From: Scyliorhinus canicula
Lineage: Eukaryota
Direction: 5' to 3'
Assembly: GCF_902713615.1 (NCBI RefSeq)
Contig: NC_052158.1
Span: forward strand, 43,735,159-43,799,158
Length of the DNA: 64,000 nucleotides
A program made the translations under genes and the position numbers. Shown one piece after another: positions 1 through 14,370 of the stretch; position 1 is the first letter of the stretch, and the number at the start of each line of letters is the position of its first letter. The notes below the pieces were generated by a model. That model had not been told where the DNA came from. It did not search any database and saw nothing but the letters and a program-made list of their open reading frames with translations.

Positions 1-1038
1 GAATCCTGTAATTGTCGTTGCACATTCTGGATGCGTCGTCATCGGAACTGGGAGCGTTGGCCTCTGACTGGTGGTGCAGACTTGTACAAGGCTGCATAGT
101 ATCCAGGCTTCCAGCAGTTTAAACATCGCTTGCCTCTTGCAGGGCAGTGTCCCTTTAATTAGGCGTTGTCACAGTTCGGGCACGTCATGACGTCAGTGTC
201 GTGACACGGTGTACGTTGTCGCACATGCACAGTGCGGTCAGCAGACGTCTGCACTTGCGCAGTGTGGGTGTCGGTCGCTTCATTATCCCGTTCGCATCGC
301 ACATGCGTGAGGCTTCGAGAATAGCGCGCGAGATGGCCGCTGTCTTCAATGCTGAGGCACTGCATCCGGGAGATGGCCTGCACACTCACTGCCTTGTGGG
401 AGGCAAGTTTATCATTTTCAGCCAATTTGTATTGGGAATACCGATTTTTTGTGTGCTCATGCACTGTACATGTTTCAATCCCGACTGGCAGGGTCATATG
501 CTTGATTTTTAAGAGCTGCTCTCTCAGAGGATCAGAGTGAACTCCAAGTACGATTTGGTCTCTGATCATGGAATCAGCAATATCACCATAGGTGCAGGAC
601 AGCACTAGCAGGCAGAAGGTAGTTAAGAAGGCATTGAAAGATTCATCTTTACCTTGAAGACATTGTTTGAATATGTAGTGCTCGAAGATTTCATTGGTGT
701 CCACTTCACAGTGACTATCGAACTTGTCCAGGATGGTCTGAAACTTTGTCTTATCCTGGTCTTCAGTGAAGTTAAACGAGTTGAAGGGGTTCAATGGCTT
801 GATCACCTGCTATTGAGAGGAGATGCACGATCTTTCTTGCATCAGACACACCCTCGAGGTCTGAGGCTTCGATGTACAGCAGAAACTTTTGCTTGAATAT
901 CCGTCAGTTGGCACTGAGATTGCCAGGTCCTAAGCTGGTGTGGAGCCTGAATCTTTTCCATGGTGCCGGGATACATTTGCTGGTCGTCACTGAACGGACT
1001 GAGGTAAGCCACCTTAAATTAGTAATCTCCTGGTATCA
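1..1038 (-). mobile_element. Gypsy/Ty3 LTR retrotransposon internal region (decayed gag), runs off the left edge
   Basis: ORF 159..806 (QGKDESFNAFLT, DSMIRDQIVLGVHSDPLREQLL, start of a zinc knuckle CPNC) is paralogous to the gag at 52900-53680. PBS-like TGATACCAGGAG on the minus strand directly follows the LTR. Confidence 0.88.
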
Positions 1039-1437
1039 TGTTGTGTTAGGTACACTGGTCTAACACTGGCTGCAACTGGATGCAGCTTAGATCAGAAAGA
1101 TACTCCAGACCTTGAAGTTAGTTCAATCAGGTTTATGGAACTAATAGTGCAGTCAGCACAGTTCTCTGTGAGTTCGACTCTGCTAATTTAAGTGTGGTTA
1201 CTCTGTCTGACTGAACCAGACAAGCTCATTGCCACGTAGTGAAGGTGAGATTGTAACAACACCCTTGACTGACTCTCTAGATGTTCATCAATGGAAAGAG
1301 GAGTGCGAGTGCCTTGTGTCTTTTAAGGTCAGATCCCACCCCCGAGTGTCCTGCCTGCTTATTGGTCATGGCCTGTTTTCTGTGTCCATTAGCTGCTTGT
1401 CTGTATATCATTATATGTGTGTCTGTGTATCATGACA
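1039..1437 (-). mobile_element. 5' LTR of the left-edge Gypsy element
   Basis: TG...CA termini (tgttgtgttagg...catgaca), adjacent PBS, and similar length and ends to the LTRs at 47633 and 53752. Confidence 0.85.
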
Positions 1438-1439
1438 AC

Positions 1440-2090
1440 GCTATCAGCAGAGCTTTCTGTTCCTTTCTTCCTCATCTACTTACCTAACTTCCAATCAAAT
1501 ACATTAAAACTACTTGCCTTTACCATTCCCTCTTAGAGCAAGTTCCACATTCCAATTATTCCCTTTGGAATGAGGTTTCTCCTGAATTCCTCATAGGATC
1601 TATTATTGACCAGCTTATATTTCTGGAACCTAGTTATGGACTCACCCACACAAGTGGAAACATCTCTCCATTTACCCCCAAATTCTTGATTTTATATTTT
1701 ATCACTTCAAAGCTTTCTGTGATGTCCCCCCATAGCCTACTCTTTTCTAGAAGAGTGCCAGCCTGTTCGATATTGCCCTGATAGTTACAATCTCTCAATT
1801 CTCAATATCATCCTCTCAATATTTTTTTGCACCTTCTCCAGTTCCTTTCCGTCCTTTTTCAATATGTTGATGTGAACCCTGCACAGCTCTCAGAGGGTCT
1901 AAACAAGGTTCGAGAAAAGTTCAACATCACTTCTCTACTATTCCTCCAAAAATGGACTCCAGTAATATTGTTTGATTTTTTATAAAATGTCCTTGTTGAG
2001 CTGTCTTGTTACTTTTAATGATTGATGAACCTGTAATTCTGTCCTTGCACAACTTGTAAATATGGCCTTTGGTCCTCCCTTTCTTCTCCA
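1440..2090 (-). mobile_element. Old CR1-type LINE 3' fragment
   Basis: Decayed CR1-like RT C-terminus. Its inverted paralog lies at 54270-54700. Confidence 0.55.
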
Positions 2091-2570
2091 ATTGAAATAA
2101 TTTGTCCACCAAATCAGCCCATAGTCTCCACTTCCCTAAAGTGCACACAGCCAGCTCTTGGGATCCAATGGGGCAAAATACTGTGAATGCTGGAAATGTG
2201 ATAGAGATTCAGAAAATGCTGGAAATGCTCAGGTCAGAATAAAAGCTCAAAAGATCCGAGAAGGTGAAAATAGCAGTTTATTTTCAACCAAAAGAAAAGG
2301 CACACAGCTTCCAAACAGGACTACCGATCATGCCGGTCCCAATTCGGGGCAGCTTTTCAAAGTTGATTCTGTGAGCTCCATCCTCGTGGGTCTCGCTAGG
2401 GTTATTACATCCCTCCCCCCTCAAAGTCTGAAGGTTTCTCTGTCGCTGCCTGCAGAAGAGGTCTCCTTCGCCTTTTACTGGGGCTGGGTCCGGGTGTGTG
2501 TAACGCATCAAGGAGTGTCGCCTTTACCGACCATCCATCTCTGACCATAGTGTCCACCAACGATATTGAA

Positions 2571-2750
2571 AATGAATGAAAATTGCTTATTGTTACGAGT
2601 AGGCTTCAATGAAGTTACTGTGAAAAGCCCCTAGTCGCCACATTCCGGCGCCTGTCCGGGGAGGCTGGTACGGGAATCGAACCGTGCTGCTGGCCTGCTT
2701 GGTCTGCTTTAAAAGCCAGCGATTTAGCTGAGTGTGCTCAACCAGCCCCT
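2571..2750 (-). mobile_element. Short tRNA-derived SINE (same family as 33170-33365)
   Basis: A/B-box-like head (ggttcgattccc), tail cacagtaacttcattgaagcctact...(ttca)n, and a second copy in the window. Confidence 0.8.
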
Positions 2751-3032
2751 GCTGGTTATGTATCCATTTCTGACGCTGAGCCTTCCATCTCCTGCTGACC
2801 TGGACCTTGGAGGTATGTGCTACCTGGTTAATGAATGATAGGCAAGGGGGACGCGGGACTGATTCATCTGGCAGGTTTGCCTCTGGTGTGGGCTGCCTGG
2901 CTTAGAGGTGGTCCACATGCTTGCGTACAGTCCGTTCTCTGGTTTTAACCATTTAGGAGATTTTGTCTGTCTTCTCCATGATGGTCCCCGGTATCCACTG
3001 GGTGTCGTCCCCAAAATTCCAGTAGTTTACTG

Positions 3033-3715
3033 CGTTATGGGCCAGGGCTTACAAACTCCAAAGTATAATATGAAGTTCACATGACCTATAACTTTTATGT
3101 TGAACTTGGCTAGGATGAGCACAAGAGCCTTCGCTTCAGGTGTGATTCATCAAACTTCTTAGGCGCTTTTATCAAAGCAAAGTTTATTATAAGAGTATAG
3201 TTAACATATATAAAACACTTATCAAGAATTTATCAATTACAAACATGAAGAAACATACAACAGCGACAGTAATCTATGTGTATAACTCTTAATGAATCCC
3301 CTTAGCTGTTCCAATTCAATACAAAATCCAATAAAACCAAAACCCCTTTCAAGGGTGTGGCCCAGCACACTGTAATTTCATTTGAATGGGACTGGTCGTT
3401 TCCCTGAGATTCTGATCCAGTTTCCAACCAGCAGATTCAAAACTCCTTCAGGAAAGCAACCCTAGCTTTAAGGTCACCAAGGCAGTTTGCCACACCCAGT
3501 GTGCTTTCAGTTCACTGGAACAGATTTAAGAGAAAACAGAGAAAACAGGGAAACTTCCTCCAGTCCAAACAAACAAACCGAAAATGAAGCCAAACACTAA
3601 ACCCCTTCTCAACTGACAGCCACAGCCCAGCTCCACTCACAAAGGACATCACTGAAGCTGTGCTACAAGCCATGTGGCAAAACAAAATTTTTCTTCAAGG
3701 GACACTAACATAACA
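3033..3715. mobile_element. Solo LTR with 4-bp TSD
   Basis: (C/T)GTTAT...ATAACA termini and ACTG duplicated at 3029-3032 and 3716-3719. Removing it restores the host integrase frame (GFKPGVAV|NYWNFGD). Confidence 0.85.
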
Positions 3716-4716
3716 ACTGCGACTCCTGGTTTGAACCCTCTGTCCTGCTTCCAGTGGTCATGATATCTCTTCTGGCGATTTTGTTTCTTTTCCACCTTCC
3801 CGCCAAGGTTGAGAAATATCTTAAACGGGAAAAGCTTAAATGGGTTTGGAGCCGTCGACCCATTAGTAGCGCTATCCTGGTTGTAACATGTGGTGTGATC
3901 CTCCAATTAAATTAAAACATGCAAATTTTATTTCAACTGACCTAGTAGTTGTTTTTTCATGATGCTCTTAAAGGTTTGCACTGCCCGCTCAGGCAGACCA
4001 TTTGAAGAAGAGTGATATGGGGCGGTAAACCCCTGAAATTCCTCATTTGTGAAAGGGGTACCGTTACTGGTGACAAGCACATCTGGAATATTGTGGATGC
4101 TGAATGATTGGCGTAGCGTCTCTATGGTGACTTGCAAAGTGGTGGAAGGCATCCGATATACATCCATCCACTTTGAGTGGGCATCAATCAGCTGTGGAAA
4201 CAGTGACCTCAGGAAGGGACCAGTGAAGTCGGCGTGCAAACACACCCAAAGGCACCCCGGCCACTCCCATGGGTGAAGCGGGGTTGACAGCAGGAGCTTT
4301 TGATGTTCTTGGCAGGCCGCACACTGCTGCACCATCCTCTCAACATTGCTATCATGCCCTGGTCACCGCACGTAGCTCCTGGTGAGCATTTTAATTTTGG
4401 AAACTCTCGGGTGTCCACTGTGTAAGTTCTGCAAAATGTTTTTTAATGCCTTGCCTCGGGGCAACCATGTGGGCTCCCCACAGGAGGATGCCGTCCTCTA
4501 CACTAAGCTCATGTTGCTTAGTTGCGAATGCTCACAGCTCTTCTGAAAGTTTTCCCTGTAGTCCCCCCCATGTAGCATGATGAGGCATAATGTTTCCAAT
4601 GTAGGGTCCTTTTGAGTCCATGCACGAATTTGTGAGGCCGTAACAGTTAACGTGTCCATGGTGTTTCGTGCCAACACAACTGTGTTTGCTGCTGGCGAGG
4701 ACGGATGGACATATAT

Positions 4717-5541
4717 TATTACAATCCCAGACCAGACCCTAACAGAGGCTAGGTTACTGGACTTAAACCCCAATATTTTAGTTTATTTTAGGACTGTTTG
4801 GAAAGAATGATTCACTGCAGGAATGATTGCATGAAAAATAGGGTTTTGGTATTTCTAAACCAAAACTATATTATGAATGCAATATTAAACCTTTAACTTC
4901 ACACCTAAAAAGAGTAGCTTGCAATTACCCCTTAACACAACTATACAATTTCCCATTAAACAACAAGAAAATAAACATACAGCTCTTAATCCAACGTAAA
5001 ATTAGCAGGGAGAGTAATACTAGCTTTATAAAATAGATTTGGCTCCGGTTGGAATCCCTTCAGAATCTGGCTGAATATCTTCAAATAGCTGCTTCACCTA
5101 GATTGTTTCAGTCCCTTCAGACAAGATTGATCTGCTTTAAAGTATTATTACTCTTTTTAAAAAACTATCCTCTTTGGAAAGAATTGTGGACTCAGTCAGG
5201 CAGATCAGAACTCAGCTCCTCTCTCGTTCTCAAAGGTTCTCCAAACTCACGGCCTTTCTGGGCTGCACCCAGCAATGACCTCATCTCCCAAGCTAAAATA
5301 CAAATTATCTCTGCAAGCTGCAAAAGCACATTAACTCCCCAAGGGCCTCCCCAGTCAAACCACAGTTCATTAGCCAAGACTGAAAAACACATTCCTTTGT
5401 TAATTTTACCTGCGATTGCATAGAAGCAAATAAAATTATTTTTAAAACCATGATCACTGCAGCCATAGACTATACTCGCAGGCTTTTCACTCTTGTACCA
5501 ATTTCAGAAGCCAATATTCCTGAATGAATCCAATCATCACA
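4717..5541 (-). mobile_element. 3' LTR of a Gmr1-like Gypsy element
   Basis: Minus-strand PPT AAGGGGGAGG is immediately followed by TGTGAT. The far end TTGTAATA resembles a decayed TCGTAACA. Confidence 0.75.
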
Positions 5542-5722
5542 CCTCCCCCTTAAAAAAAATGAACCAGCAATGTAAACAGTTTGTTTCATTTTTCTAAAAC
5601 CTTTTTAATGTTAAACATTTCTTCAGATCATATACAACTTATACTTTAGACAATATATCATTTTACATTTTTCAACCGGCAAACATCAACATGAATGTAG
5701 TCCATTTTAATCTTCTCACATG

Positions 5723-6075
5723 TTATAATCCACTCCAAGAGCGAGAGCGATTTCCAAAGACCCAGGCGGCCACTAAGATTTCATCCATACTGTTACACAA
5801 CAAAAGTTTAATCAACAATTCAGTTATATGTAGTTGCCTGGCACTGCCAGCAGAATTCTTCACTTGACAGTAAGGCAGGTTGTTGATCGATGTTGCAGCA
5901 TTCATCATCAGTTCTTCACATTTATCAACTGTTTTGTATTCTGCTTCCATCGAGGTCTGTTGAGGATATCCAAAAAATAGTTGGTAACAGCTAGTGTATT
6001 CAGACAGTGCAAGACGAGAGTCATTATATGCTGAAAGATTGCTGAATATTCTGGCTACATTTGTACCAGATCTTC
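5723..6075 (-). pseudogene. ARMC2: Processed (intronless) ARMC2 fragment carried inside an LTR retroelement
   Basis: Translations TNVARIFSNLSAYNDSRLALSEYTSCYQLF../ILNRPRWKQ and EYKTVDKCEELMMNAATSINNLPYCQVKNS..LHITELLIKLLLCNSMDEILVAAWVFGN align by eye with vertebrate ARMC2 (TNIARIFSKLTSY..; EYKSLDDCEELVINATATINNLSYYQVKNS..LYIAELLLKLL..MDGILEAVRVFGNL), recalled from memory. Confidence 0.8.
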
Positions 6076-6532
6076 AGCCTCCAGATACAATATTCCTCCA
6101 CTGAAGAGGCTCTCTGTGAAACAGTGAGACAGTTCCAGTCCTTCATCTGTCCCTCCTGAGCAGATCCTAGTATCATCAACTCCTGAGTCATTACAATGAT
6201 AGGAATTTGACTTCCTGGAACTCCATAGTTCTTGCATTTTCTTTAAATTGCAACCTGTTGTCCTGTGATTAATTTCCTCTCTTGTTAAAGTTGTTGTCAC
6301 TCCTCTTCTAGCTCATGCAGACAACATCTGGTATGCTGAGGTTCCTGTGCAATTTGATGCCGGATCTCAGTCCCCCCCCCCCCCCCCCCCCCCCCGAATC
6401 TGCCTTTTCAAGCTAGCTTTCTCTTCTGTCATCATTCTGCTAGATGAGGCTCCAATGCAATGCTGATCCCTAGCCTTCAGCTCCTCATTAACTCTATCGA
6501 GGAGTTCTGTTTGGCGTTTACGTATATCAGCC

Positions 6533-7440
6533 TTTTGTACTTGTGCTAACTTTAGTGGATTGAGCCTGCATGGATGTTGTTTAATGGGAATAGCATTTCC
6601 TATATCGACATCATGAATAATTACTTTCTTACTTCCCAATTTATTGCCACAAAGGGCTCTATGTGATTATCACAACTCTTTTAGGTCATTTTGATTTTCT
6701 TCTGAAGGTAACTCAATTATTTATCCCAATTTTTGAATACATCCTCGTTATTCAATTTAATTTGAGGAATGTCAAATTCATAATTGTCTGGATTTATCTC
6801 TTCTCCCAGAGCTACGAAGACTTCCTCCTTAATTCCTTCTCTATCAAAATACCTTTTGAGCATATTAACAGGACACACTCTTGTGAGTTTCCCTTGTCTG
6901 CCGTTCTTACCAAATAATGCACCCTATTCAATTTCCCAAGGCCCACTAAATTTTGCTTTTAATGGTTCACCGATCATTGGTAACAATACCGGTACTTTCT
7001 CCCCACTAACAAAACTACACACTTTTTATTGCTTATCCACCTCTTTTTCATCACAAGATGTGACAATTATAAATGCTTCCCAGTCAGCTCAGCAGCCCTA
7101 GTTAATATCTCCCTACAATTTGACACATAGTCCAACACCGTTGTCTCCCACCGCTGATTCATCAATTTCTCTTTAATCAATTTAAGTGGTCCTCTTACCC
7201 CAGGACCAAAAATCAATTTGAATTGGCTGCATATAATTAATTCATTCGGTGCATTCCTAATTGCAAATTGTACAAATGGAATGCCTTTATCCCAATCCTC
7301 TGGATAATCTTGACTACAGACCAACATGGTCTTGAAGAGTTTAATGCCAACCTTCTAATGCCCTTTGTGATTCCGGATGATACACCATTGCGATAAATTG
7401 CTTTATTCCTAAACTATCCATAACTTCCTTGAATAGTTCC
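6533..7440 (-). mobile_element. Gmr1-like Gypsy pol fragment (integrase upstream of RT)
   Basis: Integrase motifs (YHPESQRALEGW; DWDKGIPFVQFAIRNAPNE) at 7067-7390 come before the RT N-terminus (HDVDIGNAIPIKQHPCRLNP) at 6540-6640 on the same strand. Confidence 0.8.
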
Positions 7441-7451
7441 TTGAATAATGC

Positions 7452-7750
7452 TGCCGCAGCTCCAGGATCCCGGGTTCAATTCTAGCCTTGGGTACTGTTT
7501 GTGTGGAGCTTGCACTTTCTCCCCGTGTCTGCGTGGGTTTCCTCCGGGTGCTCCTTTTCCCTCCCACAATGCAGGTTAGATGGATTGGCCATGCTAAATT
7601 ACCCCCCAGTATCCAGAGGTTAGGTGGGATTACTGGGTTTTGGGTAAAGGGCGGAGCCATTGGCTTAATTAGGGTGCTCTTTCCAAGGGCTGGTGCAGAC
7701 TTAATGAGCCGAATGACCTCCTTTTGCACTGTAAACTGTATGATTCTAGT
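7452..7750 (+). mobile_element. HE1-type V-SINE
   Basis: B-box, V-domain (ccccgtgtctgcgtgggtttcctccgggtgctcc) and CR1-like tail gcactgta... Confidence 0.85.
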
Positions 7751-7754
7751 CAAG

Positions 7755-8750
7755 GTATTTTCATATAAACAAACAAAAGCAGAAGAAAAATCATACATTA
7801 TAAATAACCAACACCCACTCCCCCAATCTCACCCCTTCTCCTATCCTGCCTTCCCCTTTTTAACCCCCTAACCACTCTTTCTCCCCCCCCCCCCCCTTTT
7901 TTGCTGACCCCTCTGAAGGTGGCCACCTCTGGACTCAGGGCCACCTTCACCCCCAGCACTTCAGACATTACGTCTACGAGTACGCAATTATGTTTTTTTT
8001 CCAATTAAGGGGCAATTTAGCATGGCCAACCCACCTGACCTGCCCATCTTTGGGTTGTGGGGGTGAAACTCACGCAAACACGAGGAGAATGTGCAAACTC
8101 CACACAGATAGCGACCCAGGGCCAGGATTCGAACCTGGGTCTTCAGCGCCGTAGTCCCGGTGCTAACCACTGTGCCATGTGCCACCCTCTCTGTATAGAT
8201 TTCTAACTCACAAGAAATTCACTTTTTATAGCTGAAACCTAACTTTTCCTCAGCGCCGTGGCCAGCAGTGCTAACCTTGCCACCCTTCACATATGCTTTA
8301 TGTCCCCCATCCTGGCCCTCTCCCAGTCCACCAACTCCTTGTAAACCTTGGACACCTTCCCCTCCCCTATCTCATCCTTCGACAGTACCTTAGCCTGCAA
8401 CACTAGGATGGCACCAGTCTCTTTGCAAAATACCAGACCTGCAGGTGCATGAAATCGTTTCCCCTGGGTAACTTGTAATCTTCCTCCATGTCCTCCAACT
8501 TTGCCCCCTATGAACAGATTGCCAAATCGCTCAATCCCCGCCTGCCACCATCCCTGAAACCTCGCATCCAACCCCCCCCCCCCCCCCCCACCCCACGCAA
8601 ACCTATGGTTGTCGCAGATCGGCGCCCACACCGAGACACCATCCATTCCCATATGCTGCCTGCACTGCCCCCACAACCTTAAGGGCGATACCACCACTGG
8701 GCTCATGCAGTGCCTGGCCAGCGAGAACGGCAGAGGAGCCGACAAAAAAG
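7755..8750 (-). mobile_element. L1-clade LINE 3' fragments (same family as 54705-58007), interrupted by a V-SINE at about 7990-8187
   Basis: ORF 8287..8775 ([27 protein letters not shown]) matches ORF 56637..57578. Confidence 0.8.
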
Positions 8751-8754
8751 GCTG

Positions 8755-9262
8755 CATTTGGAATATTGTGCACAATTCTGGTCGCTACAGTACCAGAAGG
8801 ATGTGGAGGCTTTGGAGAGGGTGCAGAGGAGGTTTACCAGGATGTTGCCTGGTCTGGAGGGTGTTAGCTATGCAGAGAGGCTGAATAGACTTGGACTGTT
8901 TTCATTAGAACGACGGAGGTTGAGAGGCGACCTGATAGAGGTCTACTAGATTAAGAGGGGCATGGATAGTGTGGATGGGCAGGCACTCTTTCCCAGGGTG
9001 GAGGGGTCAGTCACTAGAGGGCATAGGTTTAAGGTGCGTGGGACAAAGTTTAGAGTTGTGCGAGGCAGGTTTTTTTAGAAGTGGTGAGTGCCTGGAATGT
9101 GCTGGAAGCAGATACATTAACGGAGTTCAAAAGGCATCTCAACAAATACATGGATCGGCTGGCTATATAGGGATACGGCACTTGGAAGTGCTGAGGGTTT
9201 TGGCCGAGGGTGGTAAAGGCTTGGAGGGTTGAAGTTCCTGTTCCTGTGCTGTATTATTCTTT
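8755..9262 (+). mobile_element. CR1 LINE 3' fragment
   Basis: [45 protein letters not shown] followed by a CR1 3' tail. Confidence 0.9.
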
Positions 9263-9602: not shown

Positions 9603-10690
9603 GCGGGGGGGGGGAGGGGTAAAGAAAGGGGAATCGCAGGGTAAGGAGGGCGGATGGAGGAGGTGAAGGAAGAGATGAGGTGTGAAGGAGGGATGGGATG
9701 AAGGAGAGAAGGGAGTGAGCAAGGGGGTTTGGTGGGTGAGGAAAGAGTGCATGGGGATAAAGGAGGCAAAAGGAGGAGTGAAGGGTTGAGTCGATGGCAG
9801 CATGAGGGAGGGAGTTGGGGTGAGAAAAAGGGGATGGGGTGAGGGAAAGGGTGAGGGGGATGAATGATGGAATGTGTGGGAATGGGGGTGAGTGAGGGGA
9901 TATAGGGGTGAGAGTGGATATGGGGGTGAGTGAGGGGATATGGGGAAGGTATGGGCATGTGAGGGGGTGAAGGAGGATGGGGTGGGTGAGGGGATGAGGG
10001 TGAGCGGAGAGGGGTGGGGGCTGAGGGGAGGTAAGTGAGGCAAGATGGGGTGTGAGGGAGATGAGCTGTGAGGGAGGGGGAAATGGGGGTGGGTTGTGAG
10101 TGAGGGGAGATGGGGGTGTAGAGGGAATGGGGGTGTGAGGGAGGGAATGGGGGTGTGAGGGGGTTGAGTTGTGAATGATGGGGATGTGAGGGAGGGAATG
10201 GGGGTGTGAGGGAGGGAATGGGGGTGTGAGGGAGGGAATGGGATGTGAGGGAGGGAATGGGGGTGTGAGGGAGGGAATGAGGGTGTGAGAGGGATGAGTT
10301 GAGTGAGGGGAGATGGGGGTGTGAGGGAGGGAATGGGGGTGTGAGGGAGTTGAGTTGTGAATGAGGGGAGATGGGGGTGTAGGGGGAATGTGGGTGTGAG
10401 GGGGGGAATGAGGGGGTTGAGTTGTGAATGAGGGGAGATGGGGGTGTAGGGGGAATGTGGGTGTGAGGGAGGGAATGAGGGTGTGCGAGGGATGAGTTGA
10501 GAGTGAGGGGGAGATGGGGGTGTAGGGGAATGTGGGTGTGAGGGAGGGAATGAGGGTGTGCGAGGGATGAGTTGAGAGTGAGGGGGAGATGGGGGTGTAG
10601 GGGAATGTGGGTGTGAGGGAGGGAATGAGGGTGTGAGAGGGATGAGTTGAGAGTGAGGAGGAGATGGGGTGAGTTTAGGGGGATAGAGGT
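9603..10690 (+). repeat. G/A-rich low-complexity, minisatellite-like tract
   Basis: The plus strand is nearly C-free, with (gagggagggaatgggggtgt)n units and higher-order units of about 75 bp at 10430-10670. Confidence 0.9.
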
Positions 10691-12644: not shown

Positions 12645-13904
12645 GTGGAAGGGAAACAATTCAAGTGTGAGGTTTTTAATAAAGATTTTGTGATGTCTAC
12701 AAGGCTGCTGCGACTTCAGAGAATTCCAACCGGTGAATCATGTGAGGCATGTATCAAATCATTCTCAGATTCATCACAGCTCACCAAACACCAATGCATT
12801 CACACGGAGAAACTGTTCATGTGCAAAGTGTGCATCAAATCATTCCTGGATTTAGCAACTTTCTGCAGACACCAACGCACTCACACAGGGGAGGAACCAT
12901 TTATGTGCGAGATGTGTGACCAATCATTCTCACGATCTCAGAATCTCCGTGTACACCAACGCATTCACACAGGGGAGAGGCCATTTACATGCGATGTGTG
13001 TGACAAATCATTCTCTCAGTTAGCAGCTTACCACACACACCAACGAATTCACACAGGGGAAAAATCATTCAGATGCGAGGTGTGTAAGAAATCATTCTCG
13101 CTGTCAGCAAACCTCAGGAGACATCAACGCATTCACACAGGAGAAAAACCATTCAGGTGCGAGGTCTGTGATAAATCCTTCTCATCCTCGTCAGCTCTCC
13201 TCATGCACCAACGCATTCACACCGGGGAGAAACCATTCTCATGCAAGGTGTGTCGCAAATTATTCTCATCATCTTCAGATCTCCGTAAACATGAACGAAT
13301 TCACACGGGGGAAAAACCATTCACGTGTGAGGCGTGTGAGAAATCATTCTCAGATTCATCACAGCTCTGCAGACACCAACGCCTTCACACAGGAGAGAAA
13401 CCATTCACGTGCAAGGTGTGCAGCAAATCATTCTCGGATTTATCAACCTTACGCAAACACGAACAAATTCATACAGGGGAAAAACCATTCACATGTGAGG
13501 TATGTGACAAATCATTCTTGCAGTCGGGGAACCTTCGCAAACACCAACGCACTCACACAGGGGAGAAACCATTCAGGTGCGAGATGTGTGACAAATCATT
13601 CTCATTCTCTTCAAGTCTCCTTGTGCACCAACGCATTCACACCGGGGAGAAACCATTCACATGTGAGCTGTGTAACAAATCATTCTTGTCATCTTCAGAT
13701 CTCCGTAAACATGAACGAATTCACACCGGGGAGAAACCATTCACGTGTGAGGTGTGTGAGAAATCATTCTCAGATTCATCACAGCTCTGCAGACACCAAC
13801 GCATTCACACAGGGGAGAAACCATTCATGTGCAATTTGTGCACCAAATCATTTTCAGATTTATCGACTTTCCGTAAGCACCAACAGATTCACACAAAGCA
13901 GTAA
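12645..13904 (+). CDS. ZNF-1: tandem C2H2 zinc-finger protein, 14 fingers plus one degenerate N-terminal finger, no KRAB. The paralogous start is GTG here and the first in-frame ATG is at 12693.
   Basis: Uninterrupted CxxC-x12-HxxxH repeats with TGEKP linkers. The exon acceptor at 12290/12291 is shared with paralogs. Confidence 0.92.
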   Translation: MEGKQFKCEVFNKDFVMSTRLLRLQRIPTGESCEACIKSFSDSSQLTKHQCIHTEKLFMCKVCIKSFLDLATFCRHQRTHTGEEPFMCEMCDQSFSRSQNLRVHQRIHTGERPFTCDVCDKSFSQLAAYHTHQRIHTGEKSFRCEVCKKSFSLSANLRRHQRIHTGEKPFRCEVCDKSFSSSSALLMHQRIHTGEKPFSCKVCRKLFSSSSDLRKHERIHTGEKPFTCEACEKSFSDSSQLCRHQRLHTGEKPFTCKVCSKSFSDLSTLRKHEQIHTGEKPFTCEVCDKSFLQSGNLRKHQRTHTGEKPFRCEMCDKSFSFSSSLLVHQRIHTGEKPFTCELCNKSFLSSSDLRKHERIHTGEKPFTCEVCEKSFSDSSQLCRHQRIHTGEKPFMCNLCTKSFSDLSTFRKHQQIHTKQ

Positions 13905-14370
13905 CCGTTCTGCGTGAAAATCAGTGACAAATCATTCTTTGACTCTTCGAGCCTCAGTGCACATCAATACCTTTACACTTGCCATGTGTGTGACAAATCA
14001 CTTTTGAGGTCATTGAGCATTCTACTCCCATCAACTGATCCACACTGGAGTAACCTTTCAAGTGTGGGTTGTGATAAATGTTTTGTGACTTTTCAACCCT
14101 TATGGGCACCGGAGATTCGCATGGGAAAAACTCTTCGGCCACGATGTTTGTCACAAAGCTTTCATCCCCTCTTCCCATCTCCTGAAGCACCAGTGGATTC
14201 ATACAGAAGAGAAACCATTCAGGTGTTGGGTGTATGACAAGATGGTGTTTCTCCTGGTCCATAAATGCATTGACACAGGGGAGAAACACTATCGCTGTGA
14301 GTTCTGAAATAAAACTTTCACACAGTTGACAAAACTCCTAGAACATCACTGAACCCACATAAGGACTACC
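13905..14370 (+). pseudogene. Decayed zinc-finger repeats in the 3' UTR of ZNF-1
   Basis: Frameshifted finger remnants (CHVCDKSLLR, acaggggagaaaca, catcactgaacccaca). Confidence 0.75.

What the first reader, a model, noticed from the sequence alone, without database searches (positions are those of the whole stretch)
5723..6532. LTR retrotransposon carrying captured host mRNA: a spliced ARMC2 fragment plus a second coiled-coil sequence
Seen: the pol frame stops matching a retroelement just after the RT N-terminus (..LAQVQK, about 6533). About 800 bp of non-TE coding-like sequence follow, then the element's 3' UTR, PPT and LTR resume. The distal 350 bp match ARMC2 with no intron, and jump from ..RWKQ directly to (E)YKTVD at 5941/5940 (AAGCAG|AATAC), skipping roughly 100 residues with a frame change. 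Inference: an exon-skipped mRNA was captured by template switching during reverse transcription. Region 6075-6532 (DIRKRQTELLDRVNEELKARDQ..ELEEE*QQL*QERK) does not match ARMC2 as I recall it and may be a second mRNA.
Basis: partly seen in the sequence, partly recalled or inferred. Interest (0 to 1): 0.72.

Follow-up and report, generated by a model that had tools for sequence, protein, structure and literature searches.

The report
Retrotransposon carrying captured ARMC2 mRNA piece
A dead, truncated jumping gene in this (apparently shark) genome has had most of its enzyme-coding middle replaced by a spliced, exon-skipped piece of the sperm-tail gene ARMC2 plus about 470 bases of unknown origin, which is a clear vertebrate example of an already described copying accident.

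Summary
On the minus strand, a 5'-truncated Ty3/gypsy-like element (integrase C-terminus, then RT N-terminus) stops matching other copies of its family at 6531. About 800 bp of foreign sequence follow. Then come an AT-rich tail, a polypurine tract (5551-5542) and a high-copy LTR (5541-4717).

Positions 6064 to about 5738 are ARMC2 (phmmer E 1.3e-13 against 1.8 billion proteins; ARMC2 profile E 1e-33). This part crosses three conserved intron positions without an intron. At 5941/5940 it joins the exon ending ..KQ directly to the exon starting (E)YK.

Positions 6530-6063 are not ARMC2 and match nothing I could search. Another contig from the same organism carries this segment's two ends abutting each other, which I cannot explain.

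At least one diverged genomic copy shares the skip junction, so the chimera was duplicated after capture.

The best explanation is LTR-mediated retroposition by template switching (Tan et al. 2016). It is a new member of a known kind and of modest interest.

The parts
6531..7445 (-). 5' remnant of a Ty3/gypsy-like element. It holds the integrase C-terminal region (about 7440-6830, ..YHPESQ..ALE.., ..CPVNMLKRYFDRE), then a linker and the RT N-terminus (about 6650-6532, ending LAQVQK). It has several stops and frameshifts and is cut off upstream by a SINE (7445-7770).
   Evidence: Frames read. Depth in the DNA run is in the hundreds to thousands, and a roughly 83%-identical copy spans 6531-6874, so the integrase-then-RT adjacency is a family trait. 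Pfam gave no hit on these short pieces, so the domain identities come from motif reading.
6063..6530 (-). Cargo 2: 468 nt of unidentified origin. It is not ARMC2.
   Evidence: No hit in the ARMC2 HMM, Pfam, protein searches (32), Atlas (31, 33), PDB or Rfam. About 4-5 other DNA contigs carry it. A 4306-nt contig in X1 (also seen in X5) carries 6153->6063 directly followed by 6530->6247.
6372..6395 (-). A run of 24 G (C on the + strand) inside cargo 2.
   Evidence: The related 4306-nt contig aligns across it with 30 gap letters, so the run is probably short or absent there.
6042..6064 (-). ARMC2 partial exon, TNVARIF(S), equal to caecilian ARMC2 (P0001) residues 488-494. The capture starts inside this exon.
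   Evidence: tblastn and HMM. An intron at 494/495 is present in genomic contigs L012, L020, L005 and L025 and is implied by a teleost isoform that ends there.
5941..6041 (-). ARMC2 exon for P0001 S495-Q528 (..SNLSAYNDSRLALSEYTSCYQLF, then LDILNRPRWKQ one frame over). The T-run 5977-5972 holds one base more than the reading frame allows.
   Evidence: The exon end after ..KQ is conserved in L012, L020 and L005, and the next exon in bird contig L004 starts exactly at D529 in phase 0.
5940..5941 (-). Exon-skip junction AAGCAG|AATAC. P0001 residues 529-634 are missing and the reading frame shifts by one base.
   Evidence: In bird contig L004 the missing part is a single 322-nt exon (322 mod 3 = 1) lying between these two boundaries. 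Exact-locus contigs in X1 and X5 cross the junction, and so does an approximately 85%-identical DNA contig (5852-6083).
5818..5940 (-). Complete ARMC2 exon, (E)YKTVDKCEEL..QLHITE, 123 nt.
   Evidence: It has the same length and boundaries as the L004 exon 2200-2322 (74% nt identity, no indel). Single-exon fragments from other genomes start at EYKS and end at ..HIAE.
5738..5817 (-). ARMC2 partial exon, LLIKLLLCNSMDEILVAAWVFGNRSRS, about P0001 676-702. The exon runs to 713 in other species, so the copy ends inside it.
   Evidence: There is no intron at 5818/5817.
5542..5737 (-). The element's AT-rich 3' untranslated tail, ending in the polypurine tract AAGGGGGAGG (5551-5542). The junction with ARMC2 lies between 5738 and 5728. 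There is no poly(A).
   Evidence: Other copies' alignments start at about 5728.
4717..5541 (-). 3' LTR, about 825 bp, starting TGTGATG.
   Evidence: Summed depth of 400-5000 in DNA run X7, and 94 contigs diverge at 4717. There is no second LTR in the window.

Best explanation
This is a chimeric LTR-retrotransposon copy made by LTR-mediated retroposition. While the element's RNA was being reverse-transcribed from its 3' end, the reverse transcriptase left the element just upstream of its 3' tail. It copied part of a co-packaged, already spliced ARMC2 mRNA, from inside the exon for residue ~702 back to inside the exon for residue 488. That mRNA lacked the 529-634 exon(s), so it was an out-of-frame, probably aberrant isoform. 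The enzyme then copied about 470 nt of at least one other RNA and returned to the element RNA at the start of the RT domain. The resulting cDNA lacked RT/RNase H and was integrated. At least one further genomic copy shares the exon-skip junction, so the chimera was later duplicated, most likely by being mobilised in trans as a non-autonomous element. The copy in this window is old and dead: it is truncated at the 5' end by a SINE and other debris, and its pol remnant is full of stops. Shown: the layout, the ARMC2 identity, the absence of introns, the exon-boundary junction, the lack of poly(A), and the multi-copy status. Inferred: template switching in a virus-like particle, the order of events, and trans-mobilisation.
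For: Three intron positions are crossed without an intron, and the skip falls exactly on exon boundaries. Family copies diverge from the window at exactly 6531 and rejoin at about 5728. Everything lies on one strand, in element order, followed by the polypurine tract and a high-copy LTR with a sharp end. The ARMC2 part starts and ends inside exons and has no poly(A) or LINE tail. A DNA contig about 85% identical spans 5852-6083 across the skip junction, and 14-15 distinct DNA contigs cover the EYK exon. One DNA contig joins 7400 directly to 5598, which links the integrase part and the 3' tail in another copy (table 5c). The mechanism, including partial mRNAs, replacement of internal ORFs, multi-gene chimeras and secondary retroposition, is described for fly, mosquito, zebrafish, chicken and mouse in PMC5131818.
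Against: Only one LTR is present, so no target-site duplication or LTR pair proves that the whole piece entered as one cDNA. Microsimilarity at the switch points cannot be tested without the parent sequences; the shared 7-mer GTACAAA (6540-6534 and 6066-6060) has a rough chance probability of about 0.03. The 6531/6530 junction and the G-run are not covered by an independent exact-locus contig in what I was shown. Cargo 2 is permuted relative to another contig, which a simple two-switch model does not explain. The depths are sums over contigs, not copy numbers.
Confidence: 0.8

Rival explanations
1. A DNA-level mosaic. An ARMC2 processed pseudogene made by a LINE, and another fragment, landed in or next to an old LTR element. 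Later deletions removed RT/RNase H and the insertion hallmarks.
For: The region is dense TE debris with SINE insertions and another gypsy pol directly below 4717. There is only one LTR and no target-site duplication to prove a single cDNA.
Against: There is no poly(A), LINE 3' tail or target-site duplication at either cargo border. The mRNA copy lacks its 3' end, which LINE-primed copies normally keep. Cargo and element share one orientation, and the cargo exactly replaces the internal ORF region. A diverged second copy shares the junction.
Confidence: 0.08
2. Capture by transcription and splicing rather than by template switching. An element sitting in sense inside ARMC2, or next to it, produced a read-through or fusion transcript that was spliced to downstream exons and then retrotransposed.
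For: The exact ends of cargo 2 (they abut in another contig) could be exon ends. The skip junction is a splice product in any case.
Against: The ARMC2 part begins and ends in the middle of exons (residue 488 of exon 441-494, and residue ~702 of exon 676-713), which splicing does not produce. The element's own 3' tail and LTR follow the cargo, which read-through would not give.
Confidence: 0.07
3. Partial assembly artefact: the join across the 24-G run, or at 6531/6530, is a misassembly between two loci.
For: No exact-locus contig was shown across 6351-6734. At 6499 only about 3 of 30 depth units in X1, and none in X5 or X7, carry the window's letter.
Against: Homopolymer runs break short-read contigs in any case. 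The cargo-2/ARMC2, skip and ARMC2/tail junctions are each crossed by exact-locus contigs in two runs. The ARMC2 capture stands even if this join fell.
Confidence: 0.04

Closest known systems
LTR-mediated retroposition (Tan et al. 2016, Genome Res 26:1663; PMC5131818)
   Same: An intronless, partial mRNA copy replaces part of the internal ORFs between discontinuous parts of one LTR element. There is no poly(A). More than one source sequence lies in one chimera. There are signs of secondary copying.
   Different: The host is a cartilaginous fish, according to earlier notes of this scan, and the carrier has a Gmr1-like domain order. The captured mRNA is an exon-skipped, frame-shifted isoform. Microsimilarity at the junctions could not be tested. 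The copy is old and lacks its 5' half.
Maize Bs1 retroelement (Jin & Bennetzen 1994; Elrouby & Bureau 2001, 2010; cited in PMC13317346)
   Same: An LTR element that carries fragments of several host genes and persists as a non-autonomous family.
   Different: Bs1 is in a plant and forms an expressed chimeric ORF. Here there is no evidence that the 116-codon ARMC2-derived frame is used.
Retroviral transduction of cellular genes (v-onc capture) and HERV-K capture of FAM8A1 (cited in PMC5131818)
   Same: Spliced host sequence replaces viral coding sequence through recombination during reverse transcription.
   Different: No infectious virus and no selected function are involved. The cargo is a small internal gene fragment.
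Gmr1-like Ty3/gypsy elements (PMC3587641, citing Goodwin & Poulter 2002)
   Same: The integrase lies upstream of RT on the same strand, about 40 codons apart, and this layout is shared by a diverged family copy.
   Different: Only the integrase C-terminus and about 45 RT residues survive here, so there is no phylogenetic placement.

Membership tests
LTR-mediated retrocopy (chimeric LTR element) | The host-derived part is intronless (copied from spliced mRNA). | tested here: met
   Intron positions 494/495, 528/529 (with 634/635) and 675/676 of ARMC2, seen in genomic contigs L004, L005, L012, L020 and L025, are crossed without an intron at 6042/6041, 5941/5940 and 5818/5817.
LTR-mediated retrocopy (chimeric LTR element) | The cargo is flanked on both sides by discontinuous parts of one LTR element in the same orientation, with internal ORF sequence replaced. 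| tested here: met
   Family copies match up to 6531 and from about 5728. RT/RNase H is missing. One other DNA contig links the 7400 region directly to the 5598 region. Caveat: the 5' LTR is absent.
LTR-mediated retrocopy (chimeric LTR element) | Microsimilarity between element and mRNA at the switch points. | tested here: inconclusive
   GTACAAA occurs at 6540-6534 and at 6066-6060. A proper test needs the parental ARMC2 mRNA and an intact element, and neither was available.
LTR-mediated retrocopy (chimeric LTR element) | No poly(A) tail and no target-site duplication around the cargo itself. | tested here: met
   The sequence at 5760-5700 and 6545-6515 shows neither.
LINE-mediated processed pseudogene | The 3' end of the mRNA with poly(A) or a LINE tail, flanked by a target-site duplication. 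| tested here: not met
   The ARMC2 copy ends at about residue 702 of about 863, inside an exon, and is followed at once by the element tail.
Ty3/gypsy, Gmr1-like clade | The integrase domain lies upstream of RT. | tested here: met
   Frames. A diverged copy spans 6531-6874. The domain calls rest on motifs, because Pfam was blank on the short pieces.
Ty3/gypsy, Gmr1-like clade | RT/integrase phylogeny groups the element with Gmr1. | not tested
   Too little RT remains, and I built no consensus of the element.
LTR retrotransposon (structurally complete) | Two LTRs, a primer-binding site, a polypurine tract and a target-site duplication. | tested here: not met
   Only the polypurine tract and the 3' LTR are present. 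No repeat of the LTR was found in 64 kb.
ARMC2 gene (functional copy) | Full set of exons encoding the ~860-residue ARM-repeat protein. | tested here: not met
   Only residues ~488-528 and ~635-702 are present, with a frame shift between them.

The most novel reading that the evidence does not exclude
Cargo 2 (6530-6063) is exactly one unit of an RNA whose end joins its start. This could be a circular RNA copied once round, or two halves of one RNA cut at a single point and picked up by end-to-end template jumps. That would explain why its two ends abut each other in an independent 4.3-kb contig. If so, this would be natural evidence that an LTR-element reverse transcriptase copies circular or sliced cellular RNAs into the germline.
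Probability: 0.08. Interest if true: 0.7.

Novelty: new member of a known kind. Interest (0 to 1): 0.35.

Why it matters
This is a well-resolved case, outside the species surveyed so far, of an LTR element shuffling host exons. It records an exon-skipped, out-of-frame ARMC2 transcript that was present where the element replicated; ARMC2 is a sperm-flagellum gene, so germline expression is plausible. It also shows that such chimeras can persist as small families. It adds no new mechanism. The only open point with wider reach is the permuted, unidentified second cargo.

Tried and rejected
- **Frame change.** Alignment to ARMC2 proteins showed that the ..LDILNRPRWKQ reading is right and that one extra base in the T-run hides the shift.
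- **Short-piece protein searches.** Searches with short pieces by reference were blank. Because of the length filter this says little.
- **Cargo 2 searches.** Atlas (31, 33), PDB (best E 0.12-0.26, to a virus matrix protein, ribosomal L36 and c-Jun) and Rfam gave nothing usable.
- **Upstream extension of ARMC2.** By eye, ARMC2 homology might continue upstream of 6064 (..RLKI / ..LEAEDL). The HMM does not support this, so I rejected it.
- **G-run as non-templated addition.** I rejected the idea that the poly-G run was added at a captured 5' end, because a related contig is continuous across it.
- **Hammerhead/retrozyme idea.** A core-motif search on the permuted dimer of cargo 2 found no convincing stem.
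- **Natural isoforms.** No ARMC2 isoform lacking 529-634 occurs among 165 fetched proteins.
- **Domain anchoring.** tblastx of the element remnant against the rest of the window found nothing, and Pfam was blank on its pieces.
- **Rules followed.** The ARMC2 exons were searched as they lie in the window.

Full report
**Layout.** The sense strand of everything discussed here is the minus strand. Reading from high to low coordinates:
- 7770-7445: a SINE, repeated many times in the window.
- About 7440-6830: the C-terminal part of a Ty3/gypsy-type integrase, broken by stops and frameshifts.
- A short linker, then the start of an RT domain ending ..LAQVQK at 6532.
- 6530 to about 5732: roughly 800 bp of sequence that is not element sequence.
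- An AT-rich stretch ending in the polypurine tract AAGGGGGAGG (5551-5542).
- From TGTGATG at 5541 down to 4717: a high-copy block I take to be the 3' LTR.
- Below 4717: the pol of a different gypsy element, with a Pfam rve hit at 3928-4335.

There is no second LTR in the 64 kb, so the element lacks its 5' half.

**Where the element stops and resumes.** I laid contigs and reads of four runs of the same (coded) organism on 4300-7500 at 80% likeness. Three diverged family copies (records 13, 20, 21) align down to exactly 6531 and then continue into unlike sequence. Nine DNA contigs that match the 3' tail stop matching at about 5728. The LTR block has summed depths of 400-5000 in DNA run X7, and 94 contigs diverge at 4717. 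One DNA contig joins 7400 directly to 5598, so the integrase part and the 3' tail occur together elsewhere. A roughly 83%-identical copy spans 6531-6874. The integrase-then-RT order is therefore a family trait and fits the Gmr1-like gypsy layout (PMC3587641). An earlier first-reader note in this genome reports the same layout. Pfam was blank on these short pieces, so the domain names rest on motifs.

**ARMC2 identity.** I searched the ORF 5726-5950, by reference, against 1.84 billion representative proteins. It gave 24 hits. The best is an 863-residue caecilian protein at E 1.3e-13 and 60% identity, matching residues 635-701. Of the eight best full-length hits I looked up, seven carry the name armadillo repeat-containing protein 2, and the eighth is an unnamed sea-anemone protein. 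A profile built from 124 ARMC2 proteins hit only one of 182 stop-free pieces from 4300-8000. That piece is 5726-6073, at E 1.2e-33, with two blocks matching profile positions 492-522 and 639-706. Nothing else in the cargo scored.

**The junction.** Aligned to ARMC2 proteins, the first block reads TNVARIFSNLSAYNDSRLALSEYTSCYQLF in one frame and continues as LDILNRPRWKQ one frame over, against the family's LFLALLNKHQKKQ. The shift sits in the T-run 5977-5972, which holds one base too many.

**Test against real exon boundaries.** I therefore scanned JGI metagenome contigs with an ARMC2 alignment and obtained 30 eukaryotic contigs. None looked human.
- L004 is bird DNA. Its three exons are 97-100% identical to hoatzin ARMC2.
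  - One exon of 322 nt starts after a CAG acceptor exactly at the residue following ..KQ, in phase 0. It ends one base into a codon.
  - The next exon is 123 nt and starts AATACAAG. It has the same length and boundaries as window 5940-5818, with 74% nucleotide identity and no indel.
  - The third exon starts at the residue matching window 5817.
- Invertebrate contigs L012, L020, L005 and L025 have introns after ..ARIF (494/495) and after ..KQ (528/529).
- Single-exon gene fragments from other genomes begin at EYKS and end at ..HIAE.

The window's ARMC2 part is therefore:
- a partial exon, 6064-6042;
- the complete S495-Q528 exon, 6041-5941;
- the 529-634 exon(s), missing;
- the complete EYK exon, 5940-5818;
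- a partial next exon, 5817 to about 5738.

Because 322 mod 3 = 1, skipping that exon shifts the frame. The copy begins and ends inside exons, and there is no poly(A) or LINE tail. I searched the exons only as they lie in the window and joined nothing.

**Copies and expression.** Exact-locus contigs with 0-6 mismatches in runs X1 and X5 cover 5675-6351 and 6734-7190. They cross the cargo-2/ARMC2 junction, the skip junction and the ARMC2/tail junction. I saw none across the 24-G run (6395-6372) or across 6531/6530, so that join rests on the assembly. In DNA run X7, a 329-nt contig about 85% identical spans 5852-6083, across the skip junction. It cannot be the intron-bearing gene or an allele, so the chimera exists in at least one more diverged copy. 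Fourteen to fifteen distinct DNA contigs cover the EYK exon, and four to five cover its flanks and cargo 2. Raw oligo-dT RNA reads (X24) lie on 5691-6118 in one direction only. They differ from the window in a fixed pattern and are 89-95% alike. At two of those sites a single DNA contig of depth about 4.7 matches them. An expressed relative therefore exists, either the gene itself or a sibling copy. These depths are sums over contigs, not copy numbers.

**Cargo 2 (6530-6063).** It does come from elsewhere. A 4306-nt contig in X1 (depth 27.5, also seen in X5) carries 6153->6063 directly followed by 6530->6247 at roughly 90% identity, and it has no ARMC2 part. The segment's two ends therefore abut each other in that contig, which a plain two-switch capture does not predict. 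Possible explanations are a tandem unit, a circular RNA, or two halves of one RNA cut at that point. A hammerhead-core search on the permuted dimer was negative. The G-run is probably short or absent in that contig (30 gap letters), so it is not a capture scar. GTACAAA occurs both just before the element break (6540-6534) and at the cargo-2/ARMC2 junction (6066-6060). This hints at a microsimilarity-guided switch but is weak evidence, with a chance probability of about 0.03.

**Mechanism and comparison.** Every feature matches LTR-mediated retroposition as described by Tan et al. 2016 (PMC5131818):
- a partial, intronless mRNA copy replaces internal ORF sequence between discontinuous parts of one LTR element;
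- there is no poly(A);
- chimeras can combine several sources;
- the product can be retroposed again.

Maize Bs1, HERV-K/FAM8A1 and retroviral oncogene capture are the classical parallels. What is particular here is the host lineage, the Gmr1-like carrier, the capture of an exon-skipped out-of-frame isoform, and the odd second cargo. I built no consensus of the element and repaired no frame.

**Verdict.** This is a new member of a known kind and of modest interest. The permuted cargo 2 is the one unexplained point.

Noticed in passing
window 12741-14360 (+): An array of about 16 C2H2 zinc-finger units with an 84-bp period. The last units are degenerate, with in-frame stops.
   Followed up: no
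window 9860-10680: A G-rich minisatellite (GGGAATGGGGGTGTGAGGGAGG-like units of 18-20 and 75 bp). It produces a spurious 437-codon P/S/H-rich ORF on the minus strand.
   Followed up: no
window 7445-7770, 8000-8200 and at least 12 other places: Many 70-85% identical copies of a SINE (..GGTGGCACAGTGGTTAGCAC..). One of them truncates the chimeric element at its 5' side.
   Followed up: partly
window 3650-4716 (-): A second, unrelated gypsy pol remnant (Pfam rve hit at 3928-4335) directly abuts the LTR end at 4717, in the same orientation. The elements are nested or juxtaposed.
   Followed up: partly
window 8710-8949 (+): An ORF with the look of a LINE RT C-terminal region (..[23 protein letters not shown]..). 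I did not run a profile search on it.
   Followed up: no
window 5726-6073 (-): The extra base in the T-run offsets the frame shift made by the exon skip, leaving a 116-codon open frame through both ARMC2 blocks. This could be chance (roughly 1 in 3 for an indel) or a sign of past use. I could not test it without sibling copies.
   Followed up: partly
L004 (metagenome contig Ga0065711_1055828): A JGI 'metagenome' contig is bird host DNA. Its ARMC2 exons are 97-100% identical to the hoatzin protein. This is host carry-over in a microbiome sample.
   Followed up: partly
same genome, other pieces (scan notes s1-200266, s1-253650): Earlier notes report an hnRNP mRNA fragment inside an LTR and a host intron piece inside a CR1 tail. 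Template-switch captures may be recurrent in this genome.
   Followed up: no
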